From sequence record PQ330092.1: a stretch of 64,000 nucleotides of DNA; one strand, given 5' to 3'. A program made the translations under genes and the position numbers. How positions within the stretch are numbered: the stretch's first letter is position 1; every line of letters begins with the position of its first letter. This document shows positions 3,936 to 63,935 of the stretch, piece by piece. The notes beneath the pieces are model-generated. The model worked only from the letters and a program-made list of their open reading frames with translations, ran no database searches and was not told the DNA's origin.

Positions 3936-4115
3936 ATGCAACAATTCTATAGAGAACACATAAGCATTAAAGACCGTTTCATGTACGACACCTTCGTGAA
4001 GTACTACAAACTAGGAACAAAAAGTACTAAAAATATTAATCTCAATAGCTGCATTTATGCTGTACTAACACAAGATAATCCCTACAGGGAAATCATTGCC
4101 CTGGCATCTATATAA
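3936..4115 (+). CDS. hypothetical 59 aa, left array (below ORF-track cutoff)
   Basis: Hand translation MQQFYREHISIKDRF...PYREIIALASI*; SD AAGGA. Confidence 0.7.
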   Translation: MQQFYREHISIKDRFMYDTFVKYYKLGTKSTKNINLNSCIYAVLTQDNPYREIIALASI

Positions 4116-4125
4116 AGGAAACCAA

Positions 4126-4785
4126 ATGAAACTTAATCCACACAGCAAACAATACCTTAAGCACTTTAAATACCTCAACAGTATTCAAGCAGAATCTTTT
4201 ACACCAGCATATACGTATCACCCAAATGTACTAAAGAAACGAAATAAAAAGAAAAAATCCAGAAATGTTCTCGTATCTAAGAACCTCAAATCGTACTTGA
4301 AGAAAAATAATATAGCTCTTGCTTTTATTAATATCTATAATACTGATTTAAAAGTATTGAGTACTAATACCAGCACAAAAGCACTAAAGAATGCATCTAT
4401 CTATATACACATGGATAATATCCCGTGCACTATAATTCTATCTTTCGGGAATGTATACTTCTTCGGGAATTGTAATAGCACCCATGATATCAGTACTGCA
4501 CAATTCCAAATCGGCGATATGTACTGCATGGGTTCAGAAAAAATACACGATAACATGCACTTCTTCCAAAAGCAACGTACTAACGAAACTGATACAGTAC
4601 TGCAATTCCTAAAAGAACTACAAAACAAAGAATTAACACCAGAAGAAGAATTCATGTACAGTACTGTAATCGATAATCCAGAACTCTATAAAAACGCGTA
4701 CAATCTAACAAAACATGTACAGGAACTTATCAGTACTGATAAGAAATTTCATCACCTCATTACGTATATTTCAAACTATGTATAA
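4126..4785 (+). CDS. hypothetical 219 aa with basic stretch and EEEFMYSTVID motif
   Basis: SD AAGGA before MKLNPHSK; KKRNKKKKSR; C-terminal variant of the EExFQxSLV motif. Confidence 0.8.
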   Translation: MKLNPHSKQYLKHFKYLNSIQAESFTPAYTYHPNVLKKRNKKKKSRNVLVSKNLKSYLKKNNIALAFINIYNTDLKVLSTNTSTKALKNASIYIHMDNIPCTIILSFGNVYFFGNCNSTHDISTAQFQIGDMYCMGSEKIHDNMHFFQKQRTNETDTVLQFLKELQNKELTPEEEFMYSTVIDNPELYKNAYNLTKHVQELISTDKKFHHLITYISNYV

Positions 4786-50656: not shown

Positions 50657-50657
50657 C

Positions 50658-50897: not shown

Positions 50898-50926
50898 TAT
50901 TGAAAATAAATGTAAGGGTAATTAAC

Positions 50927-51657: not shown

Positions 51658-51880
51658 GTTAAAAGAACGACTAATTAAATCCAGAAAACTTACAAATCAA
51701 CTTCCAAACGACACAAACAAGTCACATGCCGAAAGGAGTGCAGAAGTTTTATACATTCAACTCATGTACTTTCTTGGCACTGACAGACAAGAGTATTACA
51801 TTGAAAGTATGCTTCGATATCTTAAATTCTCTATAAAGGAAAAGATACATGCTCAAGAATTTAAAAATCCTAACAGTTAA
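51629..51880 (+). CDS. LGTxxQE-family paralogue 20
   Basis: AERSAEVL...FLGTDRQE; recent duplicate of 19. Confidence 0.85.
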   Translation: MQMKYLTDDELKERLIKSRKLTNQLPNDTNKSHAERSAEVLYIQLMYFLGTDRQEYYIESMLRYLKFSIKEKIHAQEFKNPNS

Positions 51881-52091
51881 TGAATATCATACGATTGTAA
51901 TGAAAACTAATAGTGCAATTTCTAAAAAATCAAACCCCAAGTACATACTGGAACACACATTCGAAGAACGTCAATTAGCTTTAGTTGAAGCAAAACTTCT
52001 TGCACTCCTAGGAACAAACTATCAGGAAGAATACATCAGAAAACTAATATACCTTTTAACTAAACATATAAGAAAAAGAAAAAATGCATGA
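51849..52091 (+). CDS. LGTxxQE-family paralogue 21
   Basis: LLGTNYQE. Confidence 0.85.
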   Translation: MLKNLKILTVNEYHTIVMKTNSAISKKSNPKYILEHTFEERQLALVEAKLLALLGTNYQEEYIRKLIYLLTKHIRKRKNA

Positions 52092-52318
52092 AACACTTGA
52101 CAGATGATGAACATGGACTTATAGTAATGGATGTAATCAACATCGAATACAAAAAGTTGATACGCTACCGTTGTTATGAAGATAAGCAACTCGTTCTAGC
52201 AGAACAGAAGTTGTTTCGACTCTTAAACACAAACTTCCAAGCACAATACGAAGAATCGTATATGTACCTTTTGGCGAGGAAAGCAAAAAGAGATTATGAA
52301 AATTTTAAGCAAAGGTGA
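52088..52318 (+). CDS. LGTxxQE-family paralogue 22
   Basis: LLNTNFQA. Confidence 0.85.
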   Translation: MKHLTDDEHGLIVMDVINIEYKKLIRYRCYEDKQLVLAEQKLFRLLNTNFQAQYEESYMYLLARKAKRDYENFKQR

Positions 52319-52517
52319 TTCAGTAATATTACTTATAGAGAGTTCAAGTAAATTCTTAAACATAACACTGTCTGATATAGATGAAGATGACAAAGAAGTA
52401 CTGAGAGCAGATTTAAGAGTACTGTTACATATCGGAACAAACCTACAAGAAGAATATGTAGAGTGCTACATTAATGAACTTAAAGAATCAGTACTGAGAA
52501 AATGCAAATGCAAATGA
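52296..52517 (+). CDS. LGTxxQE-family paralogue 23
   Basis: HIGTNLQE. Confidence 0.85.
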   Translation: MKILSKGDSVILLIESSSKFLNITLSDIDEDDKEVLRADLRVLLHIGTNLQEEYVECYINELKESVLRKCKCK

Positions 52518-52741
52518 AAATCATTTCACCCACAGAATACAACCAACTATTAAGTAGTTTAATTCTAAAGCTGTTTATAACAAAAAGCATGAAATTACCA
52601 GATGATGAAATAAGTATTCTAGTAAGTGAAATCTATGTTCAAGCTACACTAGGGACTAACTATCAAGAATGCAATATTAATGATTACATCAATGAACTAA
52701 AAAGGTTTATCCAATGCAAATGCGAATCATTACCGAAGTAG
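52502..52741 (+). CDS. LGTxxQE-family paralogue 24
   Basis: EIYVQATLGTNYQE. Confidence 0.85.
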   Translation: MQMQMKIISPTEYNQLLSSLILKLFITKSMKLPDDEISILVSEIYVQATLGTNYQECNINDYINELKRFIQCKCESLPK

Positions 52742-52956
52742 AATACCTAACAATCATAAATGGACTGTTTTCGAAGTTATTTGCCATTAACACATCAAAA
52801 CTTCCAGATTCTGATAAAATTATTAAGTTAAATGAAATCTACGTTCAAGCTACTCTAGGAACAAACTATCAAGAAGCCAATGTGTATAATTACATTAATA
52901 CACTCAAAAGGGTAATACAATTAAAATGCACAGACAGCACACACACAAACCCCTAG
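52714..52956 (+). CDS. LGTxxQE-family paralogue 25
   Basis: EIYVQATLGTNYQE; recent duplicate of 24. Confidence 0.85.
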   Translation: MQMRIITEVEYLTIINGLFSKLFAINTSKLPDSDKIIKLNEIYVQATLGTNYQEANVYNYINTLKRVIQLKCTDSTHTNP

Positions 52957-53156
52957 GAACAGCAGAATACATTGAACTAATGGCTGCAAACTTCTCATCC
53001 TTTAAGAAACTGATGCAAGAATCAAAGAATGATTTAGAATATCACATCAAAAGTTCAGATTTAAGATTGCTACTCACTCTAGGAACAGATTCCCAAGAGC
53101 GATTTGTCAATGAGCATATTAGAGCACTTTTAAATGGCATCAGGAATAAACTATGA
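52926..53156 (+). CDS. LGTxxQE-family paralogue 26
   Basis: TLGTDSQE; start uncertain. Confidence 0.8.
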   Translation: MHRQHTHKPLGTAEYIELMAANFSSFKKLMQESKNDLEYHIKSSDLRLLLTLGTDSQERFVNEHIRALLNGIRNKL

Positions 53157-53368
53157 AGGAAATATCAAATCAAGAGTACTTGGCACTATTCAGGAAGAAT
53201 AATCACAAATATATGGCACTTGATTCAAGAACTGATATAAGTGAACTTGAAAAAAATCTTTTGCGTTCAGAGATGATAGTACTGACACTCTTAGGAACAC
53301 AGCATCAAGAGAGAACTGTTAATTCACACATAGGGATTCTTATGCAGATAGTTCAGGAAAAGATATGA
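53153..53368 (+). CDS. LGTxxQE-family paralogue 27
   Basis: LLGTQHQE. Confidence 0.85.
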   Translation: MKEISNQEYLALFRKNNHKYMALDSRTDISELEKNLLRSEMIVLTLLGTQHQERTVNSHIGILMQIVQEKI

Positions 53369-53586
53369 GAATCATAACACAACAAGATATTCTTAAGTTC
53401 ACAAGGGTTCATGCATCTGAATTTGATGCTATATTATCAAAAAGTTACAACAACCCTTATACACAAGATGTACATTACAGTGAATTATGGATGTATATAC
53501 TTTTAGGTACAAATAAGCAAGAGCAAGCCGTACAGAAGTATTTGACAGCTTTACGTGATGCTACTGCTAATGGAGTACATGTTTAA
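53365..53586 (+). CDS. LGTxxQE-family paralogue 28
   Basis: LLGTNKQE. Confidence 0.85.
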   Translation: MRIITQQDILKFTRVHASEFDAILSKSYNNPYTQDVHYSELWMYILLGTNKQEQAVQKYLTALRDATANGVHV

Positions 53587-53587
53587 T

Positions 53588-53830
53588 ATGAAAGTACTGA
53601 CAGAACTAGAAATGTATCATAGATTTAATAAGTACTATCATTTACTTAAGCCTATACAGAGGATTAAATGTCCATTTGAAGAGAAACAGGTTTTAATCTA
53701 TGAGCACAAGTTCTTTGTATCATTAGGTACAGATCAACAAGAGTACTATTTGACGTTGTACTTGATTACATTAATAGATTTAATTCACTATAAAACCAAA
53801 CAAGCTAATAAAGAGAAATATGAAAACTAA
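53588..53830 (+). CDS. LGTxxQE-family paralogue 29
   Basis: MKVLTELEMY start (uncertain); SLGTDQQE. Confidence 0.8.
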   Translation: MKVLTELEMYHRFNKYYHLLKPIQRIKCPFEEKQVLIYEHKFFVSLGTDQQEYYLTLYLITLIDLIHYKTKQANKEKYEN

Positions 53831-54164
53831 TATACAACTCAAGGTATATAAATCATTTGAACATACATATATCAAAAGTAGTCTATGTAGAGATGTAATG
53901 GATTACAAGGGTAAGCCATTCACAATTACCTATGATTCTTATGTTAGTGATTTATATATATCATTTGTTAATTACGAAAATAAAATATACAAGCACGTTG
54001 ATATTAAAGATTTAAGTACTTTATCACCAGAGGAATACTTTCAGGAATCATTAGTATGGGATTTAGAGTTTCCTATGCCATTAGTACATAAGATGATAGT
54101 ACTAATGAAAGAATCTAAACAGGAGCCTAATGGTGATTATGAAGAACACACAGTTGAGTATTAA
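53820..54164 (+). CDS. EExFQxSLV-motif protein
   Basis: LSTLSPEEYFQESLVWD. Confidence 0.85.
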   Translation: MKTNIQLKVYKSFEHTYIKSSLCRDVMDYKGKPFTITYDSYVSDLYISFVNYENKIYKHVDIKDLSTLSPEEYFQESLVWDLEFPMPLVHKMIVLMKESKQEPNGDYEEHTVEY

Positions 54165-54534
54165 AAGTACTGATAATATTAAGAGTTATACAAGCTCAAG
54201 TACTGTGACAATCGAAGTGAATTCTCTTAATGCTGGTAATACAGTAGATAAGTTCTTTATTGCTCAAGGGTACAGGAAAGATATTCATCAATATTGTTCA
54301 GTATATGGGGAGTACAATAGTACTGAAGATATAATTTATTGGTCAACACATCAAGATTATATAACTAAAATTGGCGTTCCAGATGTTAGTACTTTATCTG
54401 AAGAAGAATACTTTCAGTACAGCTTAGTACATGATGTACCTATACCTTTAGGGTTAATCAAGGGTATACAGGAAGAGGTTCATAAGCTTAAATCCATGAG
54501 TAAAGGTACTTTCATTAGAACAGTGCAGTACTAG
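54139..54534 (+). CDS. EExFQxSLV-motif protein
   Basis: VSTLSEEEYFQYSLVHD; SD GGTG. Confidence 0.85.
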   Translation: MKNTQLSIKSTDNIKSYTSSSTVTIEVNSLNAGNTVDKFFIAQGYRKDIHQYCSVYGEYNSTEDIIYWSTHQDYITKIGVPDVSTLSEEEYFQYSLVHDVPIPLGLIKGIQEEVHKLKSMSKGTFIRTVQY

Positions 54535-54535
54535 C

Positions 54536-54564
54536 TTGACAGAACTTTTCATTACTGATATAGT
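54536..54564 (+). promoter_or_regulatory. sigma70-type promoter
   Basis: TTGACA-17-TATAGT. Confidence 0.7.
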
Positions 54565-54593
54565 ACACTAACGTTAATCATAGGGTAAAAATT

Positions 54594-54839
54594 ATGTTAA
54601 ATTTTTTAAATTTTCTTATCGTCTTGTGTATTGTTCTTGGGATTGCACCATTTGTATTGTATTTCATGGATTCAGATGAAATGCAAAAGATGAATTGCAC
54701 AAGGACAGGACAGAGTAGAGTAGAGACGATTCTTATGCCTGTTACGGTTATTGTTAATAATATGCCCATTACCAACATGGTCCCTACCCTAACGACAACG
54801 TACCAGTACTCTTGTGCTGACGGAGAGAGGTGGAGATGA
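54594..54839 (+). CDS. membrane-anchored small protein
   Basis: N-terminal TM FLIVLCIVLGIAPFVLYF; two Cys in the soluble part. Confidence 0.75.
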   Translation: MLNFLNFLIVLCIVLGIAPFVLYFMDSDEMQKMNCTRTGQSRVETILMPVTVIVNNMPITNMVPTLTTTYQYSCADGERWR

Positions 54840-55147
54840 AATTTAATATAGCAAAAACATCGAGTATATGTATTTTTGGTTATGCTGATGAGTTAGGTGA
54901 TATTGACATTCTTTTGTACAAAAAGGATGGTGTTATGCATTTCAAGTACCAGGATGAAGAGGCAGACAATTATCTTTTACCTAATTTAGTACAAATGCAG
55001 GAAGAGGAATTATTCCAGTACAGCTTAGTATACGACATTGATATTTGCACGATGCCAGTACTAATTAGTATTCAAAAAGTGATGCTCGATATGTATGATA
55101 AGCTAATACAAGGTATGTCAGGGAGGATCATTGAAATTGACATATAA
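54836..55147 (+). CDS. EExFQxSLV-motif protein
   Basis: MQEEELFQYSLVYD. Confidence 0.85.
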   Translation: MKFNIAKTSSICIFGYADELGDIDILLYKKDGVMHFKYQDEEADNYLLPNLVQMQEEELFQYSLVYDIDICTMPVLISIQKVMLDMYDKLIQGMSGRIIEIDI

Positions 55148-55343
55148 GAATATACCTAATGCATATGAAATGAAGTACAGGGAGTTTATTAAAAATGTAC
55201 ACACCGATCCTTTTAATATCAAAATATCAGAGTTTGATGTATTATTTTATCTAGGGTCAATAGCACAGGATCAATGCGTTGATAAGCTCATATGGTCCTT
55301 GAAAATGGAGATACAATGCAGACCCAAATATATAAAAAGGTAG
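55131..55343 (+). CDS. outlying LGTxxQE-like paralogue
   Basis: SEFDVLFYLGSIAQD; TTG start. Confidence 0.7.
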   Translation: MKLTYKNIPNAYEMKYREFIKNVHTDPFNIKISEFDVLFYLGSIAQDQCVDKLIWSLKMEIQCRPKYIKR

Positions 55344-55579
55344 ATTCTTTATTGTACGCTTCAAAGTACAGGGATTTTTGTTTACGAGGGGGAGAGGAAG
55401 ATTTCTCTCTGAGATTATCTGAATTTAATATGTTATTTTATCTTGGTACAAAAGATCAAGAAGATACAGTACAGAAATTTATCAAGCACCTTGAACAAAA
55501 AATTCATATGCAAATTTTTATGCTTAAGGTACATAATGAGATAAACAAATATGAACCCAACAATAGTACAGGATCTTAA
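55316..55579 (+). CDS. outlying LGTxxQE-like paralogue
   Basis: SEFNMLFYLGTKDQE. Confidence 0.75.
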   Translation: MQTQIYKKVDSLLYASKYRDFCLRGGEEDFSLRLSEFNMLFYLGTKDQEDTVQKFIKHLEQKIHMQIFMLKVHNEINKYEPNNSTGS

Positions 55580-55937
55580 AAAAGTAATATTTCTTTTGAA
55601 TACCAGAAGTGAATTGTATACAGAGTTAAAAGAGATTAATGCATTTTATCAGAATTTTGTAATCCAAGAGATCAGTGATTTAATTACAGATGCATTATTT
55701 GAATTCTCGGAGAAATACAAAGGTTCAGAGTTCAGTGTTAAGAATGTTATTCGTCCAAGTGCAAGGAAAATTATATTATCACATTTTACATTTGACAATA
55801 AAGATTTATTCAGTCATAATCCAAGTACAGCTTTATATTTTATTCCTGATTCAGACAAAAATCATCCTATTCATTACGGATGGATTTTGTCATATATAGT
55901 ACAAGGAAAGGAGTATCCTATTAAATGGAAAGATTAG
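55551..55937 (+). CDS. hypothetical
   Basis: 128-aa ORF in an overlapping chain. Confidence 0.75.
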   Translation: MNPTIVQDLKKVIFLLNTRSELYTELKEINAFYQNFVIQEISDLITDALFEFSEKYKGSEFSVKNVIRPSARKIILSHFTFDNKDLFSHNPSTALYFIPDSDKNHPIHYGWILSYIVQGKEYPIKWKD

Positions 55938-56086
55938 GGCGATTAGATTATTACACAATTAATACAAATTATTTGTTGCGTAATATAAAATCCGATTACA
56001 AAATATGGATAAAGAACAGAGATAGCATGTGTTATGAATTTTATTTAGATTATGCTATCAAACGATTTTTAAGAGAAGAACATTAA
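55925..56086 (+). CDS. hypothetical 53 aa (below cutoff)
   Basis: Hand translation MERLGRLDYY...FLREEH*; TAATG coupling to the next gene. Confidence 0.55.
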   Translation: MERLGRLDYYTINTNYLLRNIKSDYKIWIKNRDSMCYEFYLDYAIKRFLREEH

Positions 56087-56289
56087 TGCAAAAGATTAAT
56101 ACGATAACATTAAATGCATTACAGGATTCATTATTAGATAGTATTAAGATGTATTACAATATACATTTGAAGGGTGGTATTGATAATTACGATTATTATT
56201 TGAGTTTAATTACATTTGAGCACCTTTCAGTACAGGACAGGATTTTACATCCTACAAATCCTAGGTATCCATCGATAGGTAAATTATGA
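56086..56289 (+). CDS. hypothetical
   Basis: ORF track. Confidence 0.7.
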   Translation: MQKINTITLNALQDSLLDSIKMYYNIHLKGGIDNYDYYLSLITFEHLSVQDRILHPTNPRYPSIGKL

Positions 56290-56840
56290 ATGAGATAGAG
56301 TTATTAGCACACAAGATAAGTACAATAATGCTTATCCTCAATAACAACCATCCTATATCGCATATAGATGGAATCCTGAGTCAGAGGACAGGTGGTAGTT
56401 TATATTTGTCCATAAACGCAGATATCGCAAGGAAATACATTGATATTGACATTGATGTTGAAATCGAATATGATACAACGGGGATTGTTGATGTAGGTGC
56501 ATTAATCAGTTCAAATCCAGTATCAGCATCCCCATTGACCAAAGGTGTTAGTACAGGATTCGAAGGGTATTTGTGGTACAATACCAATGATGATTATTTT
56601 ATATATCAGCATTCCAATACAAATTATGATGAAGACAAATTTCAGTTCATAGACCCTTATGATGAAGCTGGCGTATTCCAACAATCATTAATCACAAAAC
56701 CGCATGAGATGATGTATCTAATGTTATTCAGTACAATGCATTTGAATTCATTAATTAAAGGTTTAAAATTTTATATTCAATTAAATTTAGTCCATGTAGT
56801 TTATGATTTATTAATGCAAGGATACAGTTATGAAGTATAA
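56286..56840 (+). CDS. FQxSL-motif protein; paralogue of 56912
   Basis: MNEIELLAHKIST...EGYLW...VFQQSLI...LMQGYSYEV. Confidence 0.85.
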   Translation: MNEIELLAHKISTIMLILNNNHPISHIDGILSQRTGGSLYLSINADIARKYIDIDIDVEIEYDTTGIVDVGALISSNPVSASPLTKGVSTGFEGYLWYNTNDDYFIYQHSNTNYDEDKFQFIDPYDEAGVFQQSLITKPHEMMYLMLFSTMHLNSLIKGLKFYIQLNLVHVVYDLLMQGYSYEV

Positions 56841-56890
56841 AATGATGTATACCCAAAGATATGATTTATGTTGAATTAGAAGATGATGCA
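56830..56890 (+). pseudogene. frameshifted, truncated copy of the 5' end of 57408
   Basis: Near-identical to 57408-57466 but ACCCAAAGAT vs ACCCCAGAT (+1) gives an early stop. Confidence 0.7.
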
Positions 56891-56911
56891 TCCATCAATA
56901 GGTAATAATAT

Positions 56912-57418
56912 ATGAATGAGATAGAATTATTAGCACACAAGATTAGTACAGTAATGCTTATGCTCAAGAATAATCATTCTATGCATAAGTACATTTATAT
57001 AGGTGATTTACGCATAGAAGATAGATATGATAAATTATCGTTTTTGTTTAAAGATGAAAGTAATGCAAAAGTTTGTTTTGCAGCATTTGCCCAAGGCAAT
57101 CCAGAACAAGCATCTCCTGTTATATACGAAAATAGTGAAGGGTATTTGTGGGTCAACACAAACGATTATTTCTTTTATGATTTGAAACAAAATGATGAAG
57201 TAGAAGCACGAATTGATTTAATTGATATTAGTTCAGATTGTAGTTCTGAATTATTTCAGAAATCGTTATTATACAGTCCTCGTCAAATACATTATCTAAA
57301 GTTATTCAGTTCATTGTACGCGAATCCTTTAATTAAGGGTTTTAAATTTTATATCAAAATTCCGTACCTTTCAAACGTTTATGATATTTTGATGCAAGGA
57401 TATAGTTATGAAGTATAA
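56912..57418 (+). CDS. FQxSL-motif protein; paralogue of 56286
   Basis: SSELFQKSLLYS. Confidence 0.85.
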   Translation: MNEIELLAHKISTVMLMLKNNHSMHKYIYIGDLRIEDRYDKLSFLFKDESNAKVCFAAFAQGNPEQASPVIYENSEGYLWVNTNDYFFYDLKQNDEVEARIDLIDISSDCSSELFQKSLLYSPRQIHYLKLFSSLYANPLIKGFKFYIKIPYLSNVYDILMQGYSYEV

Positions 57419-57719
57419 AATGATGTATACCCCAGATATGATTTATGTTGAATTAGAAGATGATGACGATGGGTGGAATTTGATTTATTCAAGAAGTTCA
57501 GGTTGGTACATGGCACATTTAAATGATTCGATAGTTACAGATTATTTTGTAGATTTCAATACATTATCCGATGAAGAATTGTTCCAACAGCAATTAGTGA
57601 TTGACACGGGTGGTTATGATGTCTTATTATTAAAAAAGATACAGAAAGCTGTTATTGATTTTAAGCCCATGATATGGCAAAGGAAATATTATGACCTCGA
57701 AGTACCGTACCAGCAATGA
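57408..57719 (+). CDS. EExFQ-motif protein
   Basis: FNTLSDEELFQQQLVID. Confidence 0.85.
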   Translation: MKYKMMYTPDMIYVELEDDDDGWNLIYSRSSGWYMAHLNDSIVTDYFVDFNTLSDEELFQQQLVIDTGGYDVLLLKKIQKAVIDFKPMIWQRKYYDLEVPYQQ

Positions 57720-58257
57720 TATTCAGTACACCTACGCTAATGCAATCCTTATGGGACAAAAGTTAGCTTGTATTGTTGCAGCCTTATATAATGCACAGAA
57801 AGATTACAAGCGTCACATCCACAAATGTATTGGTATTATTCCATCGAAGTACAATACATATATTACGTGCACGAGTCATTTTGATAAACGATTCAATACA
57901 CCTGATACACCAAATGCCCGTAGTGTTATTGGTCTTTTGGATTTTGCACCTGGTGCTGTTATTGGAAAGAATGATTTAGAGTACGCATGGTATAATAAAA
58001 ATGCCCCGTTAGTAATGGTAAAATATGATACAGAAACGAACAAAGCAATAGAGTACAATACATATAAATCAGAGGAAGAATTTTTCCAAGGTTCAATGCT
58101 TGTACCAGTGCGTTTGTTATTTTATAATGTCATAATGAGTACAGTACACAATAGTCCATTACACAAGAATCACAAAATTAATTTCAATTTTTGTGCTTAT
58201 GCGATTGATGGTGTGTATGAGTGTTTAATGGAGGTATTGAGTTATGAAGCTGAATAA
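57691..58257 (+). CDS. EExFQ-motif protein
   Basis: YKSEEEFFQGSMLV. Confidence 0.8.
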   Translation: MTSKYRTSNDIQYTYANAILMGQKLACIVAALYNAQKDYKRHIHKCIGIIPSKYNTYITCTSHFDKRFNTPDTPNARSVIGLLDFAPGAVIGKNDLEYAWYNKNAPLVMVKYDTETNKAIEYNTYKSEEEFFQGSMLVPVRLLFYNVIMSTVHNSPLHKNHKINFNFCAYAIDGVYECLMEVLSYEAE

Positions 58258-58585
58258 TACATTTGATATTAATAAGTTAAGAGAATGGTTTTATAGTATT
58301 GAAATTGAAGCCATCCCGTATCATAGATATGAACAATATAATTTAACCAGTATTGATATCCGTGAGTTGTACGCGTATTATCAAAGTGCATTAGAGATGC
58401 ATAAGTTATTTTTGAGTACAGATTTTGTTCTAAATTACAATTTTGAGGAATTTAAAAATTATAATTTAGTACAGAAATATGTAGTAGCAAAGTACATGTA
58501 CAATCAAGGAATCAAAGGTTGCATCGAATTCAATACCGTTCTTATTTTAGTTGAGGTAATTTTATGCACCGCATGTCTGATTTAG
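58244..58585 (+). CDS. hypothetical
   Basis: SD GGAGGT; ORF track. Confidence 0.75.
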   Translation: MKLNNTFDINKLREWFYSIEIEAIPYHRYEQYNLTSIDIRELYAYYQSALEMHKLFLSTDFVLNYNFEEFKNYNLVQKYVVAKYMYNQGIKGCIEFNTVLILVEVILCTACLI

Positions 58586-59070
58586 AGTTCAGTTTAGATG
58601 CAGCCTTTAAATTTGTTCACAAAATAGAAACAATATACAGTACATTATGTGCAATAACATCAGTATCAAAAGAGTTTGATGTTGGTGAAAGGTATCAGGT
58701 GTGGAATAATTCATTTTATAATAAAGAACATTCTGCGACGGCATTTTATATTTTAGCATTTAATCCCAGCAATTGTTACCCAGAGAAGCATGAACGTTAT
58801 CCAAATGACGACATGTGGTTTGAGTACAAAGAAGATTCTGATATGTCGTCAATTGTAGTTCCTGATGATTTTAATGCACAAGATTTAACAGAAGAGTGGT
58901 GGTTCCAGCAGAATTTAGTACATGATGATATTGATTTATTTTTCTATATTGCATTTAAAATGCTTTATCACAACAATATAGTTAAAGAAAGTGTATCGTT
59001 TTCATGTCTATATATTGATGATTTGTACAATGAAATTCAAATAAACATGCCCAGAACGCCTGTATCGTAA
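58573..59070 (+). CDS. EExFQ-motif protein
   Basis: LTEEWWFQQNLVHD. Confidence 0.8.
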   Translation: MSDLEFSLDAAFKFVHKIETIYSTLCAITSVSKEFDVGERYQVWNNSFYNKEHSATAFYILAFNPSNCYPEKHERYPNDDMWFEYKEDSDMSSIVVPDDFNAQDLTEEWWFQQNLVHDDIDLFFYIAFKMLYHNNIVKESVSFSCLYIDDLYNEIQINMPRTPVS

Positions 59071-59095
59071 GATATGGGCTTTTTTCGTTTTGGTA

Positions 59096-59124
59096 TTGAC
59101 ATAGAAGACCAAAGCTGTTATCAT
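59096..59124 (+). promoter_or_regulatory. sigma70-type promoter with extended -10
   Basis: TTGACA-17-TATCAT with TGn, after a GCCCA/TGGGC-TTTTTT terminator-like element. Confidence 0.65.
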
Positions 59125-59152
59125 GTGTAATCATTTTAAAGGAGAACATATA

Positions 59153-59665
59153 GTGAGTTTCATAATCCCAAGTACATACGAAGATGCATCAAGTGCAGTT
59201 CATAAGATTCATTATATTTTTAATTTAATTATTAGATCTGCAAAAATTAAAATGTATGCACCTCTTGTGACAAATAATCGAAATGAAGAAATTTTTATTA
59301 GCACAGACAAAATTATTTTTCCATCTTTCCATGAAGATAGATTGTGGTTCATGCATTTAGCTGCATTACAAAAATATAAAATGTCAATTCGTAATAATTT
59401 GGATATACCGTTATATCATCCTGATATTGGAGAGGATGAATATTTTCAGTACAGTACAGTACACCGCCATGAAGATATCTTTGTTGCTATGCTTATTGCT
59501 AAATTGAATACCGTTGATTTGGAGCAGCACAAATATAATAATACATCATGTAAGATCATAATCCCTGCATTCATAGCTCTTTATGATTATGTGGTGCATA
59601 ACATAAAAGATGATACATATGCTTTCAATGAAGAGTATTTGGATTTTTTTAAGGAGAACATATGA
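59153..59665 (+). CDS. EExFQ-motif protein
   Basis: Probable GTG start after GGAGA; IGEDEYFQYSTVHR. Confidence 0.75.
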   Translation: MSFIIPSTYEDASSAVHKIHYIFNLIIRSAKIKMYAPLVTNNRNEEIFISTDKIIFPSFHEDRLWFMHLAALQKYKMSIRNNLDIPLYHPDIGEDEYFQYSTVHRHEDIFVAMLIAKLNTVDLEQHKYNNTSCKIIIPAFIALYDYVVHNIKDDTYAFNEEYLDFFKENI

Positions 59666-60192
59666 GCAGTACAACAGTACAGAAAGCAATGTCATTCAAT
59701 GAAATTGGTACATTTAAAGATAAGATCATTGATTGCCTTGAATACATGATTTGTAGTAATATCGAAAGTATCGAGATATTTAACAAGACAAATCGCTCTT
59801 ACCATATGATGTACATTGCAAACAATAATGGTATCATTCCATTTATTTCGGATAGTACAATATGGTACGCATGTGATACGAAAAAAACCACAATAGGTTT
59901 ACATTTATTTGAGACACATTATGATCTAATTATTCCTGAACATTGTATGCAAGAAGAAGAATATTTTCAAATGCAATGTATACATTCACCATTAGTGTTG
60001 TTTAGTTTATATATTATACCTTATATCACCAAATGTGTTCATGAGAATAAAGCTCCGTGGAATCATGAATTTGTATCGTTGAAGTTATTGTATAATGTAT
60101 TAGTAGAATATTATGATTACAGGCACAATGGTACAATCAGTGATGTATGGGATTTTGAATCGCTAAGGGTGAAAACATACACAGGTGAATGA
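59662..60192 (+). CDS. EExFQ-motif protein
   Basis: MQEEEYFQMQCIHS. Confidence 0.8.
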   Translation: MSSTTVQKAMSFNEIGTFKDKIIDCLEYMICSNIESIEIFNKTNRSYHMMYIANNNGIIPFISDSTIWYACDTKKTTIGLHLFETHYDLIIPEHCMQEEEYFQMQCIHSPLVLFSLYIIPYITKCVHENKAPWNHEFVSLKLLYNVLVEYYDYRHNGTISDVWDFESLRVKTYTGE

Positions 60193-60808
60193 TATGACCA
60201 GAATTAAAATGTATGATTTGATGCAGTACAGTAAAAATGCCATTCCAGTGCTTAATAAAGTGCTGGATGCATTCATTGCCAAATACCCTGAGAATTCAGT
60301 GTTATGTATTCCATTTAGCGTTCCAGATAAAGATGATATATTCCAAGTGAATGTCAGTACACGTGGTATTACATTACAGCAGAAATACATGGATACGGAA
60401 TATTATGGAATAAAGTTGGATTCAGTACAGGGTTCAAAATCAGCCTATGATTTTTTTGTTCCTAATAATATAGAGTCATGGGAAACAAACATTTCAAAGA
60501 AAGATGAAAATGATGTTCCTATTAGTGGTGTGTTCAACAATAAAGTTTTTTATTATTACGAAACCGACAAATTCCCTGAAGAGTTATATTACAATTCAGA
60601 AATGAATGAAGATGTAGATGCATTCATGTTTCAATTATCTTTAGTACATGATATCATTGATGTTCAAGAGTTAAGAGCAGAAATCAATTTAGCTAAAGAG
60701 TTATCGGACATGCTGCCACCGTTTAGTATGCTTTTTTGTGAAGGTGGTTATTTTTCAAAAGAAGTGTTTGAACATTTCGTAGATGTTGTAAAAGGGTTGG
60801 ATATATAG
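60185..60808 (+). CDS. FQxSLV-motif protein
   Basis: DAFMFQLSLVHD. Confidence 0.8.
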   Translation: MNDMTRIKMYDLMQYSKNAIPVLNKVLDAFIAKYPENSVLCIPFSVPDKDDIFQVNVSTRGITLQQKYMDTEYYGIKLDSVQGSKSAYDFFVPNNIESWETNISKKDENDVPISGVFNNKVFYYYETDKFPEELYYNSEMNEDVDAFMFQLSLVHDIIDVQELRAEINLAKELSDMLPPFSMLFCEGGYFSKEVFEHFVDVVKGLDI

Positions 60809-60809
60809 T

Positions 60810-61004
60810 ATGCTTACAGTTGATGTTAAACAAAAATACCGTAAGTTTGATTGGTTCACCGACAGTTTCCAGCTTGAATTATTACATTTGAATATCTGTG
60901 AAACATTATGTGCAGAAACACAAGATGAATTTGATGATAGAGTGCTTCACATCGTAGTTCTTTCTTGCTTTAAACATTTTGGTTATTTTTTCGGACAGAA
61001 TTGA
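60810..61004 (+). CDS. hypothetical
   Basis: ORF track. Confidence 0.65.
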   Translation: MLTVDVKQKYRKFDWFTDSFQLELLHLNICETLCAETQDEFDDRVLHIVVLSCFKHFGYFFGQN

Positions 61005-61012
61005 GGTAAAAA

Positions 61013-61528
61013 ATGCATCAACACAAGCATCATTCATATGATTTTGCAATTAACATTATGAAGTTCATTCGAGCGTTGGAGGATGGGAAGCTTAGTCATA
61101 AGTACAGGAAAGAGGGTAACAATTGGTTCAGAAATGATTCCGAGTTCAGTTGTCATAAAATCGTGTATAGTAATCAGTACAGTGCCAATTACCTACAAGA
61201 TGTAGTGATGTGTTTTGAATACGTGTTGCAGTTCAGGGGTTCAATCCAAGATGAGTTGATGGAGAACATGTACATCCGATACCTTCCAATGCTCAAAGAT
61301 GAAAATGTATTATTAAATTCAATATACCAACGAGTTCGTGAAATTGAGTGCAGGGATATATTAGATACAGAAGAATCGTATTTCCAGCAATCCCTGATTT
61401 ATTCACCTGATTTATTACAGGTACATAATTTGTTTAATACATTACGTCAGAACATCAGTACAGACATATTTTTGTCATTATCGGATTATGATACATTTGT
61501 TAAAGATTTAGAGGAAATAGGTTTATGA
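61013..61528 (+). CDS. EExFQxSL-motif protein
   Basis: DTEESYFQQSLIYS; SD GAGGT. Confidence 0.8.
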   Translation: MHQHKHHSYDFAINIMKFIRALEDGKLSHKYRKEGNNWFRNDSEFSCHKIVYSNQYSANYLQDVVMCFEYVLQFRGSIQDELMENMYIRYLPMLKDENVLLNSIYQRVREIECRDILDTEESYFQQSLIYSPDLLQVHNLFNTLRQNISTDIFLSLSDYDTFVKDLEEIGL

Positions 61529-61869
61529 GTCAATTTTCGGTTTATATAGTAAACGTCAGTAAAGATGGTAGTTTAATTGAATTTGATGTAGTTGATAACA
61601 ATGATAATTCATATGGTATTAAGGTACAGGACAATGATGTACAGTTCAGTACAAGGACAAATTTTGAAAATCCAGTCCAAGTTCCGAATTTCATAGAAGA
61701 TGAAGCTGCACGATTCCAATACGAAACGGCATATGACAATGTACATATGCATATTATTATGCAAACGAGTTTAGTTCAATTAGTTCCTTTGTTCAGACAA
61801 AATATATATGTACATGAAGTGTCGATTAATGGCATTCAAAGTTCCGTTTTGTTCGGTACAAATATGTAA
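61525..61869 (+). CDS. EExFQ-motif protein
   Basis: EDEAARFQYETAYD. Confidence 0.8.
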   Translation: MSQFSVYIVNVSKDGSLIEFDVVDNNDNSYGIKVQDNDVQFSTRTNFENPVQVPNFIEDEAARFQYETAYDNVHMHIIMQTSLVQLVPLFRQNIYVHEVSINGIQSSVLFGTNM

Positions 61870-61879
61870 GGAAAGTATA

Positions 61880-62422
61880 ATGAGTTTATTAGATACATTA
61901 GAAAAAGACAGAAGTGCAATTAAGCGTTTAAAAGAGCAAGTACAAAAGATTGTATACAACGTTGATAAGTTTGAAGTCCCAGGAAGATTTGGTGATATTT
62001 CCCATACGGAGATCAAATCCCTTAAGTCAGATTTGTTGATTAAAAATAAAAATGGGTTGATTTTAGTTTTGAGTTCAGATATGATGGGGGCAACACATAG
62101 TTATAATGCAGTATCGGTGCGTTCAGAGTGTGAAGGTATATATCTATCACAGGGTTTCAATAGCGAGACACAGGTTTGTTTTTGTGATGCAGTACATGAC
62201 CCTATGAAGTTCACGAGAAGTGAAGCCCAAGCGTTATTAGAGATATCAGACGAGAGTTTGTTTCAGTACAGTACAATGTATGACAATGATAAGCTTCGTT
62301 GTATGTACGCTGTAAAGCATTATACACAGGAGTTTTCTGGATTTGCATACCTTTTAGTTAGAACCAATACCAGATATATTGATATGTTAGAAGATTACAT
62401 CGATAAAGTTGTTAATGTATGA
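61880..62422 (+). CDS. EExFQ-motif protein
   Basis: MSLLDTL after SD AAGGA; ISDESLFQYSTMYD. Confidence 0.8.
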   Translation: MSLLDTLEKDRSAIKRLKEQVQKIVYNVDKFEVPGRFGDISHTEIKSLKSDLLIKNKNGLILVLSSDMMGATHSYNAVSVRSECEGIYLSQGFNSETQVCFCDAVHDPMKFTRSEAQALLEISDESLFQYSTMYDNDKLRCMYAVKHYTQEFSGFAYLLVRTNTRYIDMLEDYIDKVVNV

Positions 62423-62444
62423 TGTATGATTATGGGATGGGATA

Positions 62445-62612
62445 ATGCTGATGAAAGAGTTATTTGAAGATCAGTTCGATACATATGTGGATAATATTCT
62501 TTATTCCAGCCGTGCTAGTCAACGAGGAAATCGTGCTTACAATATAGATTACCTATTAGTGGTGCTGAGTTCACAGTACACCTACGCTGTACAGAGGACA
62601 TATTATGAATAA
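62445..62612 (+). CDS. hypothetical 55 aa (below cutoff)
   Basis: Hand translation MLMKELFEDQFDTY... Confidence 0.5.
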   Translation: MLMKELFEDQFDTYVDNILYSSRASQRGNRAYNIDYLLVVLSSQYTYAVQRTYYE

Positions 62613-62808
62613 TTTTAGAGATGTTGCTAAGGAGAAGTTCAAGTGCAGTTTAGATTACGGTTTAAATGATTTTCTTACATGCACAATGTACAGGAATGAT
62701 GATTATGAGCAATCCGTAATTTCGTTGCACAGATATTTCGAAATAATTTACGCAAGATATCTTAGAAGGTTAGATGGGATAGGGGATTGGAATTATGATT
62801 ACGTTTGA
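62605..62808 (+). CDS. hypothetical
   Basis: SD GAGGA. Confidence 0.7.
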   Translation: MNNFRDVAKEKFKCSLDYGLNDFLTCTMYRNDDYEQSVISLHRYFEIIYARYLRRLDGIGDWNYDYV

Positions 62809-63004
62809 AGAGCCGGAAGTGTTAAGTTCGCATAGTATTAAGGGTTTTGAATACATGATGGATTTGATTTTGAAGGATACATATTTGGTTCAGAGTGTAG
62901 ATAATACGGTACACCGAGTATTGAATTTATACGAGATGACGAGTCGAAGGCTTTGTGCGATGAAAAGGATTGAAGAAATTAAGCTTTCTAGGCTGAATAA
63001 ATAG
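62795..63004 (+). CDS. hypothetical
   Basis: ORF track. Confidence 0.65.
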   Translation: MITFEEPEVLSSHSIKGFEYMMDLILKDTYLVQSVDNTVHRVLNLYEMTSRRLCAMKRIEEIKLSRLNK

Positions 63005-63036
63005 AGACGTTTCATTTTGACAGGCCGCAGGGGGGT

Positions 63037-63091
63037 NNNNNNNNNNNNNNNNNNNNNNNNNNNNNNNNNNNNNNNNNNNNNNNNNNNNNNN
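63037..63091. other. assembly gap (55 N)
   Basis: N run preceded by GCAGGGGGGT; CCCCGCCCCCGC ~45 bp downstream. Confidence 1.
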
Positions 63092-63201
63092 TATTGTGTT
63101 TTTCAGAGTACAGTTCATGTTTCCTGAAACAAAAAATACCCCGCCCCCGCAACGTGCTCCTTATATTGGAGTTTACCTTATTAATTATAGTAGAGATTAA
63201 G

Positions 63202-63579
63202 ATGGAAATAAAATATAATGAATTTTGTGCAAGGACATGGATGTACACTGGTGAGTTAGTTACGCACTCTAACTTATACAAGGGTGATTTAAACTACGCT
63301 AGGGACAAGATTTTAAAGTACTGGAATGCTGACTTTTATTTGATGGATTTTAGTACTGGGTTTCATGGGATATCTATCGAGATGCCGGACTATACAGTAC
63401 TTGATGATGCTGCACTGTTCCAGGAGGCATTAGTATTTGATAAGAAGTACATCTGTACATTAGAAGAGATGATTGAATTACAGCGTAGAATTAAATGTAT
63501 TCACAGGGAATGTATAGATATCTGGTGCAGTACTGGTGAAGATAATTTTTGTAATCATTTCAATCTAGGGGAAGTGTGA
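63202..63579 (+). CDS. FQxxLVFD-motif protein; paralogue of 63576
   Basis: MPDYTVLDDAALFQEALVFDKKYICT. Confidence 0.8.
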   Translation: MEIKYNEFCARTWMYTGELVTHSNLYKGDLNYARDKILKYWNADFYLMDFSTGFHGISIEMPDYTVLDDAALFQEALVFDKKYICTLEEMIELQRRIKCIHRECIDIWCSTGEDNFCNHFNLGEV

Positions 63580-63935
63580 TGGAATTTGATTTTTTAATAT
63601 CAGTACATACTTTCAAGCACAGTTATCAGTACTTTTGTAATTTAAACAAAGGTGATTTAATGCACAGTGCGAATGAGTATATTCATTACACTCAGGGTAA
63701 ATTTACATTCATTGATTACAGTTCATTACAGTATCCACACCAAGATATGCCGGACTATACATTAATGGATACCGCAGAACTATTCCAAGAATCATTAGTA
63801 TTTGATAAGAAGTACTTGTGTACATTTGAAGAAGTTATTGCAATACAAAATGAAATGAAAGAGTATGCTGCTTTGCATAAACCCAATGCAAGTATTAATC
63901 AAGAATACAAATTCAATTTAGGAATTCAAGAATGA
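63576..63935 (+). CDS. FQxSLVFD-motif protein; paralogue of 63202
   Basis: MPDYTLMDTAELFQESLVFDKKYLCT. Confidence 0.8.
   Translation: MMEFDFLISVHTFKHSYQYFCNLNKGDLMHSANEYIHYTQGKFTFIDYSSLQYPHQDMPDYTLMDTAELFQESLVFDKKYLCTFEEVIAIQNEMKEYAALHKPNASINQEYKFNLGIQE

What the first reader, a model, noticed from the sequence alone, without database searches (positions are those of the whole stretch)
53820..63935. At least 17 otherwise dissimilar proteins share a short acidic EExFQxSLV(H/Y)D motif
Seen: e.g. LSPEEYFQESLVWD, LSEEEYFQYSLVHD, MQEEELFQYSLVYD, LSDEELFQQQLVID, LTEEWWFQQNLVHD, GEDEYFQYSTVHR, TEESYFQQSLIYS, SDESLFQYSTMYD and TAELFQESLVFD, plus EEEFMYSTVID in ORF 4126 on the other side of the DTR. 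The motif lies in the C-terminal half and is followed by an amphipathic helix, while N-terminal parts differ. Inference: a shared docking tag for one partner (phage scaffold, capsid loading, or a host hub; QxSL loosely recalls the beta-clamp motif QL[SD]LF), with variable payload domains attached.
Basis: partly seen in the sequence, partly recalled or inferred. Interest (0 to 1): 0.65.

Follow-up and report, generated by a model that had tools for sequence, protein, structure and literature searches.

The report
Expanded phage family sharing one helix
The shared acidic motif is real, but it is the best-conserved helix of one huge, fast-diverging family of small non-virion proteins (about 40 tandem copies) in a jumbo E. 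coli phage, not a loose tag on unrelated proteins; what the family does is unknown.

Summary
The window comes from an Asteriusvirus jumbo coliphage; 53820-60000 is 100% identical to phage JP4. The motif is confirmed. Sixteen + strand ORFs between 53.8 and 63.9 kb, plus a borderline one at 4096-4785, carry [LM]-[ST]-E-E-E-[LY]-F-Q-x-S-[LT]-[VIL]-[YHFW]-D. A loose pattern gives 15 hits against 1.4 expected by chance. Conservation is at the protein level, because synonymous codons vary freely.

The 55-N gap lies upstream of the likely ATG 63202 and more than 320 nt from the nearest motif.

The "docking tag on dissimilar payloads" reading is only partly supported:
- AlphaFold places the motif in a high-confidence internal helix of a compact fold: a five-stranded sheet, two helices and a final strand.
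- Paralogues at 16-26% identity superpose over their whole length.
- Profile comparisons extend the shared region to 40-140 columns.
- The acidic part fits a helix capping box with a hydrophobic staple.

In relatives the array continues past the window, to about 40 tandem members. It is expanded in Asteriusvirus and Alcyoneusvirus, and absent or marginal in CBB, GAP32 and PA5oct. No member is in the phAPEC6 virion proteome. Most members are acidic and under purifying selection.

Most likely these are early host-interaction proteins built on one scaffold. That function is inferred, not shown.

The parts
53820..54164 (+). Family member, short form, 114 aa; motif LSPEEYFQESLVWD (Phe codon at 54039)
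   Evidence: hits phrog_13866
54130..54534 (+). Family member, short form, 134 aa; LSEEEYFQYSLVHD (Phe at 54412)
   Evidence: leave-one-out E 8e-10
54830..55147 (+). Family member, short form, 105 aa (probable true start ATG 54836); MQEEELFQYSLVYD (Phe at 55013). This is the member that was modelled.
56286..56840 (+). Family member, long form, 184 aa; DEAGVFQQSLITK (Phe at 56676)
   Evidence: phrog_19795
56912..57418 (+). Family member, long form, 168 aa; SSELFQKSLLYS (Phe at 57254). 41% identical to 56286-56840. Absent from G17, PBECO4 and phAPEC6. Modelled at low confidence.
57408..57719 (+). Family member, short form, 103 aa; LSDEELFQQQLVID (Phe at 57582)
57691..58257 (+). Family member, long form, 188 aa; SEEEFFQGSMLVP (Phe at 58084)
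58564..59070 (+). Family member, long form, 168 aa; LTEEWWFQQNLVHD (Phe at 58903). Its profile aligns to the 56286/57691 subfamily over 143 columns.
59123..59665 (+). Family member, long form, 180 aa; GEDEYFQYSTVHR (Phe at 59444)
59662..60192 (+). Family member, long form, 176 aa; looser motif QEEEYFQMQCIHS (Phe at 59965); leave-one-out support weak (E 0.3)
60185..60808 (+). Family member, long form, 207 aa; DVDAFMFQLSLVHD (Phe at 60629); leave-one-out support weak (E 0.1)
61013..61528 (+). Family member, long form, 171 aa; TEESYFQQSLIYS (Phe at 61382). Matches phrog_9317 over residues 12-165 and phrog_12674 over 78-169.
61525..61869 (+). Family member, short form, 114 aa; degenerate motif DEAARFQYETAYD (Phe at 61714)
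61808..62422 (+). Family member, long form; 204 aa from the first start codon, more likely 180 aa from ATG 61880, which has an AAGGA upstream; SDESLFQYSTMYD (Phe at 62261)
63202..63579 (+). Family member, short form, 125 aa from ATG 63202 (listed as 63094-63579 from a TTG right after the N gap); DDAALFQEALVFD (Phe at 63418)
63576..63935 (+). Family member, short form, 119 aa; DTAELFQESLVFD (Phe at 63783). Last member before the window ends; the array continues in relatives.
4096..4785 (+). Borderline member on the far side of the terminal repeat: 229 aa, basic (pI 9.4), TPEEEFMYSTVID with Met in place of Gln. Similarity is at motif level only (leave-one-out E 0.43).
63037..63091 (.). Assembly gap (55 N), probably in the spacer between ORF 62795-63004 and the ATG at 63202; not filled or looked up
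59058..59124 (+). Terminator-like hairpin (59058-59079) followed by a sigma-70-like promoter, TTGACA-17-TATCAT with an upstream TG (59096-59124), inside the array
   Evidence: G17 annotates a terminator at the matching place
54536..54564 (+). Sigma-70-like promoter, TTGACA-17-TATAGT with TG, in one of the few intergenic spacers of the array
   Evidence: consensus match only

Best explanation
The motif is the signature of one large lineage-specific paralogue family, not a portable tag. Shown: 16 tandem members lie in the window (17 with the borderline ORF at 4096-4785), and the array continues for about 19 kb beyond the window in close relatives, to about 40 members. The members are small (about 100-210 aa), mostly acidic and not found in virions. 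They share a core of an antiparallel beta-sheet, helix 1 (the motif), helix 2 and a final strand; the long forms add an N-terminal and a C-terminal helix. Inferred from established helix rules: within the motif, [LM]-[ST]-E-E-E-[LY] is a helix start signal, namely a capping box S/T-x-x-E plus a hydrophobic staple, with acidic residues in the first turn and Pro tolerated at N1. F, S, L/T and V/I then form the packing faces of helix 1. Inferred from position and analogy: the array starts about 6.5 kb after the ~20.1-kb direct terminal repeat, is co-oriented with it, has consensus-like sigma-70 promoters in its few spacers, and so is probably transcribed early by host RNA polymerase. The paralogues most likely act as host-interaction proteins (takeover or counter-defence) that keep a constant scaffold while their sheet surfaces and extensions have diverged to bind different targets. 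The nearly invariant Phe-Gln pair suggests a constraint beyond simple packing, such as a buried hydrogen bond or a shared contact. This could not be resolved here.
For: Identity of the phage and all-hypothetical annotation. Motif excess and protein-level conservation. Fold: AF2 model of 54830-55147 (pLDDT 81, pTM 0.74) with strands 2-50, motif helix 58-67 in the most confident blocks (pLDDT 94 and 90), helix 75-94 and strand 100-104. BFVD models of paralogues at 16-26% identity superpose over 102-125 columns, TM 0.57-0.78. The long-member model shows the same order of elements plus terminal helices. Extended homology: BLASTP pairs; hhalign 143 columns at probability 94.5%, 111 columns at 82%, 76 columns at 98%; short and long members hit phrog_12674 in the same register. 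Family size: iterative HMM finds 17 window ORFs and 25 in G17 315-334 kb, one of which is the counterpart of the window's last member. Whole-genome profile hits at E<=0.001: 35 in JP4 and 35 in G17; 0 in CBB, 2 weak in GAP32, 0 in PA5oct; at E<=0.01, 31 in Klebsiella phage K64-1. Real genes: pooled dN/dS 0.32 against G17 orthologues. Acidic: pI 4.2-6.1 for 15 of 17. Not virion. Position next to the repeat. The analogous region in phage CBB is suspected to hold early genes with RpoD-like promoters (PMC5259590). Motif logo consistent with helix capping.
Against: No direct evidence of expression time or function: the only RNA-library hits are short contigs in wastewater metatranscriptomes, which may be DNA carry-over. 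Sigma-70-like sites are not enriched overall (65 found against 84 expected). With the motif removed, the flanks are not significantly similar in leave-one-out tests within this genome. Short against long groups align over only 39 columns, and the long-form model is low confidence, so full-domain homology of long and short forms rests on transitive, moderate-probability evidence. I had no model coordinates, so burial of the motif residues is inferred from helical periodicity and pLDDT, not measured. An invariant Gln is unusual for a purely structural position.
Confidence: 0.6

Rival explanations
1. Adaptor family. The conserved module of about 40 aa (strand, motif helix, start of helix 2) is a shared docking surface for one hub protein of host or phage, and the variable sheet or N-terminal part recruits different targets. 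This is the reader's idea moved from a linear tag to a folded module, comparable in logic to poxvirus ankyrin/PRANC proteins.
For: Phe is present in all 60 non-redundant motif-bearing members and Gln in 57, while everything else has drifted to 15-25% identity (the pattern used to pick these members itself requires Phe, and 82 of 86 profile-defined members match it). Short against long profiles share only this module at high probability. A possible single-copy occurrence of the module at the N-terminus of a different 162-aa protein in temperate-phage contigs.
Against: The module is predicted to be the most ordered internal part of the domain. Nearly every helix position except +2 is conserved, which fits packing on several sides better than a single exposed face. 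The acidic part is explained by helix capping. No partner is known, and the complex predictor was unavailable.
Confidence: 0.2
2. Paralogue co-assembly. The conserved helix is a homo- or hetero-oligomerisation interface, so that co-expressed paralogues form mixed complexes.
For: About 40 co-oriented, probably co-transcribed paralogues share one conserved helix. The weak structural neighbours (polo-box and p32/Mam33 folds, Z 4-6) are oligomerising folds.
Against: No test could be run. The structural matches are below the tool's own noise level of Z 8. There is no covariation evidence.
Confidence: 0.1
3. Host beta-clamp binding motif: the proteins dock on the DnaN sliding clamp through Q-x-S-L-[VIL].
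For: Partial resemblance to the clamp-binding consensus QL[SD]LF, recalled from the literature and not tested here: Q, S and L are in register in most members.
Against: Clamp-binding motifs act as extended peptides in flexible or terminal segments, whereas here the residues lie in a high-confidence internal helix. Position 2 is variable and position 5 is V/I, not F. About 40 paralogues aimed at one clamp cleft is hard to rationalise. Not testable here.
Confidence: 0.03
4. Capsid-targeting or scaffold-docking signal that loads the proteins into the virion.
For: Jumbo phages of this group have an inner body and package many proteins (PMC7247149).
Against: None of the family's phAPEC6 orthologues (gp443c-gp466c) is among the 62 virion proteins detected by ESI-MS/MS. 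No JP4 CDS04xx is mentioned among its structural proteins. Known capsid-targeting signals are N-terminal and cleaved (my own knowledge), whereas this motif is internal.
Confidence: 0.03
5. Chance, or a DNA-level repeated element (a promoter or recombination site) that merely reads as a peptide.
For: None beyond the tandem arrangement.
Against: 15 observed against 1.4 expected, and 10 against 0.03 with the acidic prefix. Synonymous codons vary freely, including Ser from both the TCN and AGY boxes. The motif sits at a constant place in a shared fold.
Confidence: 0.01

Closest known systems
PHROG families phrog_13866, 19795, 15629, 12674, 33987, 34516, 30978, 31297, 28680 and others (all 'unknown function')
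   Same: Each window member belongs to one of these families, often over its full length at E 1e-40 to 1e-143, and many cross-hit neighbouring families around the motif.
   Different: PHROGs splits the 17 members over at least 13 families and gives no function. The superfamily link, the motif and the fold are not recorded there.
Lineage-specific paralogue expansions in jumbo phages, such as the ~35-copy zinc-ribbon expansion of Bacillus phage G (PMC7824862) and the 'nearly 10% paralogues' noted for RaK2 (PMC3622015)
   Same: Dozens of small tandem paralogues in one jumbo phage genome; the phenomenon as such is known.
   Different: A different fold and motif. This family is not named or described in the papers I read. 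With about 40 tandem copies it is at least as large as the phage G case, which that review calls unprecedented.
Terminal multigene families of large eukaryotic DNA viruses (ASFV MGF360/505, poxvirus ankyrin/PRANC and BTB-kelch families); comparison from my own knowledge
   Same: Works alike in layout: arrays of diverged paralogues next to the genome end, with copy gain and loss between strains (56912-57418 is present or absent; the Salmonella phages show more indels). A host-interaction role is presumed.
   Different: No sequence or fold relationship. The host is a bacterium and the proteins are much smaller. A role in host range or counter-defence is not shown here.
Polo-box domains (4rs6, 9fjg, 5lhx, 6mf4, 8a0k) and p32/gC1qR/Mam33 proteins (7te3, 3qv0, 1yqf, 3jv1)
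   Same: An antiparallel sheet with helices packed on one face. VIA-align Z 5.1-6.0 for the polo boxes (69-76 residues aligned) and Z 4.1-5.8 for the p32 family (88-91 of 105 aligned). The p32 family is also very acidic.
   Different: All Z values are below the tool's stated noise level of about 8. Foldseek against the PDB finds nothing, PDB sequence profiles find nothing, and there is no Pfam hit. This is a common arrangement at most, not membership.
Beta-clamp binding motif QL[SD]LF / QLxLxL
   Same: Q, S and L fall in the same register in Q-x-S-L-[VIL].
   Different: Predicted helical and internal rather than an extended flexible peptide. Positions 2 and 5 differ. Binding was not tested.

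Membership tests
One homologous paralogue family (as opposed to unrelated proteins sharing a tag) | Similarity extends beyond the about 14-residue motif | tested here: met
   BLASTP pairs: 41% over 196 columns, 39% over 111, 30% over 103. hhalign between subfamily profiles: 143, 111 and 76 columns at probability 82-98%. Negative part: flanks alone are not significant in leave-one-out tests.
One homologous paralogue family | Same fold over the whole length | tested here: met
   Met for the short forms: the model of 54830-55147 matches BFVD models of at least seven other proteins at 16-26% identity, TM 0.57-0.78 over 102-125 columns. Inconclusive for the long forms: the model has pLDDT 58, with the same order of elements only.
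One homologous paralogue family | Short and long forms share the sheet region upstream of the motif | tested here: inconclusive
   Group profiles align over only 39 columns. Subfamily pairs give 45-54 columns at probability 36-52%. Both forms hit phrog_12674 in the same register about 45 residues upstream of the Phe.
   The motif is helix 58-67, in the highest-pLDDT blocks (94 and 90) of a compact domain. Seven of eight positions from -1 to +7 are conserved. Burial was not measured because no coordinates were available.
Beta-clamp binding proteins | Consensus QL[SD]LF or QLxLxL | tested here: inconclusive
   Q-x-S-L-[VIL]: three positions match, position 2 is variable, and position 5 is V/I/L rather than F.
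Beta-clamp binding proteins | Binding to the clamp cleft as an extended peptide | not testable with these tools
The predicted helical, internal context argues against it.
Capsid-targeted or scaffold-docked virion proteins | Presence in purified virions | tested here: not met
   phAPEC6 gp443c-gp466c are absent from the 62-protein virion proteome. No JP4 CDS04xx appears among its structural proteins.
Polo-box / p32 (MAM33) folds | Structural match clearly above background, and a family sequence signature | tested here: not met
   Best Z is 6.0, under the tool's noise level of about 8. No Foldseek PDB hit. No Pfam or PDB sequence hit.
Early (host RNA polymerase-transcribed) phage genes | Transcribed early from sigma-70 promoters | tested here: inconclusive
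   Two 11/12 consensus sites with TG lie in intergenic spacers (54536-54564 and 59096-59124), but there is no overall enrichment. No usable RNA data. The CBB paper only suspects this for the analogous region.

The most novel reading that the evidence does not exclude
The roughly 40-50 paralogues form a combinatorial adaptor system. The invariant Phe-Gln helix module docks all of them on one hub, such as a host protease, a chaperone, RNA polymerase or a phage factor, or lets them co-assemble. Their diverged sheets and extensions each capture a different host protein. This would be a phage counterpart of the poxvirus ankyrin/PRANC or F-box logic, and one of the largest effector families known in any phage.
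Probability: 0.12. Interest if true: 0.8.

Novelty: new member of a known kind. Interest (0 to 1): 0.45.

Why it matters
Asteriusvirus and RaK2-like jumbo phages are being developed against pathogenic E. coli, Salmonella and Klebsiella, yet more than 80% of their genes have no known function. This analysis joins at least 13 separate "unknown" PHROG families into one superfamily with a defined signature and a predicted fold. That superfamily accounts for roughly 5-7% of the genes in these phages.

With about 40 tandem copies it is at least as large as the phage G zinc-ribbon expansion, which a 224-genome survey called unprecedented. Together with the neighbouring 23-copy LGTNYQE array, it shows that the first ~50 kb after the terminal repeat is built from two massive paralogue arrays.

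This gives a concrete, testable target. One can delete the block, or express single members, to ask what a jumbo phage needs so many variants of one small protein for. If the family acts in counter-defence or host takeover, it would be a rich source of new inhibitors. If it is only a drifting family with a structural core helix, the finding is mainly an annotation improvement.

Tried and rejected
- Complex prediction (homodimer of the short member, with a clamp test as a possible follow-up) was unavailable and nothing was folded.
- The search for related loci with A1 and with A2 failed for lack of a conserved stretch.
- A degenerate DNA pattern scan of IMG/VR returned only phage 121Q and one temperate-phage lineage. 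By my rough estimate about 1-3 chance hits are expected, so that lineage is only a possible relative.
- The 1.84-billion-protein profile search gave only 32 clusters, all close relatives, with no annotated homologue. The word-index search gave 5 near-identical proteins.
- Pfam gave nothing. PDB sequence profiles gave nothing. Foldseek against the PDB gave nothing below E 0.18. Both ESM Atlas calls gave no usable lead.
- The VIA-align polo-box and p32 matches (Z at most 6.0) were rejected as membership because they are below the tool's noise level.
- Searches with the long-form model (pLDDT 58) gave nothing meaningful.
- RNA evidence: only short contigs in wastewater RNA libraries, and one probable DNA run. 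This shows neither transcription nor timing.
- A link between the FQ family and the neighbouring LGTNYQE family was tested and rejected: hhalign probability 0.4% and 0.1%.
- ORF 60810-61004 (FQLELL) matches the loose pattern but is not recognised by the family profile.
- The first literature search was too broad to be useful.

Full report
**What the window is.** Positions 53820-60000 are 100% identical to Escherichia phage JP4 and 93-99% identical to other Asteriusvirus jumbo coliphages and Salmonella phages (BF17, slurp01, PBECO4, G17, phAPEC6, 121Q). Every gene under the match is annotated "hypothetical protein".

The window holds two tandem copies of a 20,114-bp unit, at 7141-27254 and 27255-47368, with 8 mismatches. 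This matches the roughly 20.7-21 kb direct terminal repeats determined for the related phages Sharanji and fEgEco12. The assembly therefore runs across the joined genome ends. The region in question lies 6.5-16.6 kb after the repeat, on the same strand as nearly all the repeat's ORFs.

**The gap.** The 55 N at 63037-63091 follow the stop codon of ORF 62795-63004. The ORF listed as 63094-63579 begins at a TTG directly after the N run, which is an artefact of the listing. An ATG at 63202, preceded by GTAGAGATTAAG, gives 125 aa, and a 378-nt CDS of that length is annotated in the corresponding part of the G17 array.

Continuity and frame across the gap cannot be known. This ORF's motif starts at 63418 and does not depend on them.

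- A loose pattern gives 15 hits in the 594 six-frame ORF segments of the window: 14 in + strand ORFs at 53.8-63.9 kb and one at 4096-4785. Residue shuffles give 1.4 +/- 1.25.
- With an acidic prefix the count is 10 against 0.03 expected.
- One of the 14 (ORF 60810-61004, FQLELL) is not recognised by the family profile. Three looser members (59662, 61525, 63202) are. That makes 16 members in the block plus the borderline ORF at 4096-4785, and a profile of these 17 finds nothing else in the window.
- Codons show that the conservation is on the protein: Phe TTT 7 / TTC 10, Gln CAG 9 / CAA 7, and Ser from six codons in both the TCN and AGY boxes.

Aligned on the Phe, 60 non-redundant members give this signature: [LM](-6) [ST](-5) E E E [LY](-1) F(0) Q(1) x S(3) [LT] [VIL] [YHFW] D(7), with a frequent P-D near -11/-10. 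These members were picked with a pattern that itself requires the Phe; 82 of 86 profile-defined members match that pattern.

**How many members?** "At least 17" is a window-edge undercount.
- In G17 the same co-oriented block continues for about 19 kb, and motif-bearing ORFs follow one another down to about 315 kb.
- An iterative HMM over the window plus G17 300-334 kb converges on 17 window ORFs and 25 G17 ORFs. One of those 25 is the counterpart of the window's last member. That makes about 40 tandem members.
- A whole-record search with the un-iterated 17-sequence profile gives 35 hits at E<=0.001 in JP4 and 35 in G17. At E<=0.01 it gives 48 in G17, 49 in phage A4 and 31 in Klebsiella phage K64-1 (Alcyoneusvirus).
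- The same search gives 0 hits in Pectobacterium phage CBB, 2 weak hits in Cronobacter phage GAP32 and 0 in Pseudomonas phage PA5oct. These three also serve as negative controls of similar size.
- In a library of 1.84 billion representative proteins, only 32 clusters reach E<=0.001, all with the motif.

The family is therefore narrow in range but hugely expanded within it.

**Are the proteins otherwise dissimilar?** At the level of one genome's sequences, nearly so. With the motif removed, neither the N-terminal nor the C-terminal flank is significant in leave-one-out HMM tests (E 0.1-80), while whole proteins score E 1e-10 to 0.4. Three further lines of evidence show more than a tag.

1. Some pairs are plainly homologous over most of their length: 56286/56912 at 41% over 196 columns, 63094/63576 at 39% over 111, and 56912/57691 at 30% over 103.
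2. Profile-profile alignments between subfamilies reach 143 columns (probability 94.5%), 111 columns (82%), 76 columns (98%) and 54 columns (88%). Short and long members hit the same third-party profile, phrog_12674, with the Phe at profile position 108-111 and the alignment starting about 45 residues upstream.
3. The fold agrees. The AlphaFold2 model of the short member 54830-55147 (24-sequence alignment, pLDDT 81, pTM 0.74) has five strands (2-50), helix 58-67 (the motif, in the highest-confidence blocks), helix 75-94 and strand 100-104. Foldseek against BFVD finds its own orthologue. It also finds independently predicted models of at least seven other proteins, from RaK2, slurp01, PBECO4 and unnamed entries. 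These share 16-26% identity, TM 0.57-0.78 and 102-125 aligned columns.

For the long forms the evidence is weaker. The model of 56912-57418 has pLDDT 58. It shows an N-terminal helix, poorly defined strands, the motif helix 111-120, helix 123-136, strand 145-149 and a C-terminal helix. That is the same order of elements with two extra helices. The short and long group profiles align over only 39 columns. I therefore treat [quoted passage not shown] as the best reading, without claiming it is proven for every member.

**What the motif is, structurally.** This paragraph is inference from established helix rules, not a tool result. DSSP starts the helix at the first Glu. With S/T at the N-cap, [LM]-[ST]-E-E-E-[LY] is a capping box (S/T-x-x-E) combined with a hydrophobic staple (N' and N4 hydrophobic). 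Acidic residues are favoured in the first helical turn, and Pro is tolerated at N1, as in LSPEE and LTPEE.

After that, positions -1, 0, 3, 4 and 7 form one face of the helix and positions 1 and 5 form another. Only position +2 is free to vary. This is the pattern of a helix packed on several sides, and it agrees with the helix being the best-ordered part of the model. It argues against a short linear motif, which would sit in a flexible, exposed segment.

I could not measure burial because no coordinates are returned. The near-invariance of Phe and Gln, while the other core positions tolerate L/T/M/C or V/I/L/M, leaves room for an additional shared contact.

**Properties bearing on function.**
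- Fifteen of the 17 members are acidic (pI 4.2-6.1, net charge to -17). The exceptions are 57691-58257 (pI 7.6) and the borderline 4096-4785 (pI 9.4).
- Against G17 orthologues the pooled dN/dS is 0.32 (61 synonymous and 87 non-synonymous differences), so these are maintained genes.
- Gene content varies between otherwise near-identical phages. ORF 56912-57418 is missing from G17, PBECO4 and phAPEC6, and the Salmonella phages show more indels.
- None of the phAPEC6 orthologues (gp443c-gp466c) is among the 62 virion proteins found by mass spectrometry, and the JP4 paper lists none either.
- The genes abut or overlap. The few spacers carry a terminator-like hairpin (59058-59079) and two 11/12 sigma-70 consensus sites with an upstream TG (54536-54564 and 59096-59124). 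Such sites are not enriched overall.
- The CBB paper suspects that the analogous block next to its terminal repeat holds early host-takeover genes.
- RNA libraries gave only ambiguous contig fragments.

**Comparison with what is known.**
- Pfam and PDB sequence profiles give nothing, and Foldseek against the PDB gives nothing.
- The exhaustive structural search gives at best Z 6.0 for polo-box domains and Z 5.8 for p32/gC1qR/Mam33. This is below the level the tool itself calls common background, so I do not file the family under either fold.
- PHROGs places the 17 members in at least 13 families, all of unknown function.
- The RaK2 paper notes that nearly 10% of its proteins are paralogues, without describing them.
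- A 224-genome survey of jumbo phages calls the ~35-copy zinc-ribbon expansion of phage G unprecedented and does not mention this family.

The phenomenon is therefore known, but this family, its signature and its size are, as far as I could find, undescribed.

**Verdict.** There is a shared module, and the N-terminal parts do differ. But the motif is the capped core helix of a common fold in a very large paralogue family, not a portable tag. Capsid loading is contradicted, and clamp binding is unsupported.

The most likely mechanism is an array of early, cytoplasmic host-interaction proteins on a constant scaffold with diversified surfaces. This is inferred from position, charge, absence from virions and analogy; I put it at about 0.4 on its own. 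The family-and-fold statement I put at about 0.8. The main rival, at about 0.2, is that the folded module is a common docking surface. Mutagenesis combined with folding controls and partner identification would separate the two.

Noticed in passing
window 47419-55579, + strand: A second, separate paralogue array: at least 23 ORFs of 67-99 aa with the motif [LI]-G-[TS]-x-x-Q-[EDQ] (for example LLGTNYQEEYV) in their C-terminal third. It starts right after the second repeat copy, and two members (55131-55343 and 55292-55579) are interspersed in the FQ array. hhalign shows no relation to the FQ family (probability 0.4% and 0.1%). It hits phrog_4148, of unknown function.
   Followed up: partly
window 7141-27254 and 27255-47368: Two head-to-tail copies of a 20,114-bp unit with 8 mismatches. 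This is the phage's direct terminal repeat, present twice because the assembly runs across the joined genome ends. The size agrees with the published 20.7-21 kb repeats of related phages.
   Followed up: yes
window 56912-57418: This family member is present here and in JP4, BF17 and slurp01, but absent from G17, PBECO4 and phAPEC6. The Salmonella phages SD-* show further indels in the array. Gene content in the array is in flux among genomes that are otherwise 95-99% identical.
   Followed up: partly
window 63020-63036 and 63137-63150: Unusually GC-rich runs (ggccgcaggggggt and ccccgcccccgc) flank the N gap in a region of 31-34% GC. They may be part of a hairpin or a hard-to-sequence element that caused the gap. 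I did not look into other copies.
   Followed up: no
window 54594-54839: An 81-aa ORF with a strongly hydrophobic N-terminus (probably a small membrane protein; phrog_8826, unknown function). It sits inside the array, directly downstream of the best promoter-like site.
   Followed up: no
L009:9044-9532 (- strand); also in L007 and L008: A single-copy 162-aa ORF carries NLSEEEHFQQSLVRDD at residues 47-62, in contigs that also carry a serine integrase and terminase (temperate-phage-like). hhalign to the short family gives probability 93.5% over 31 columns. However, it was found by a motif pattern scan whose chance expectation I estimate at about 1-3 hits, so homology is uncertain.
   Followed up: partly
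window 50596-50821 and 50865-51090: A 226-nt direct repeat at 76% identity, spaced 269 nt apart. It marks a comparatively recent duplication within the LGTNYQE array.
   Followed up: no
window 54830 and 61808: Two listed start codons are probably too far upstream. Homologues and the Atlas record start 54830-55147 at ATG 54836 (MKFNI). ORF 61808-62422 more likely starts at ATG 61880, which has an AAGGA upstream and follows the previous ORF's stop.
   Followed up: partly
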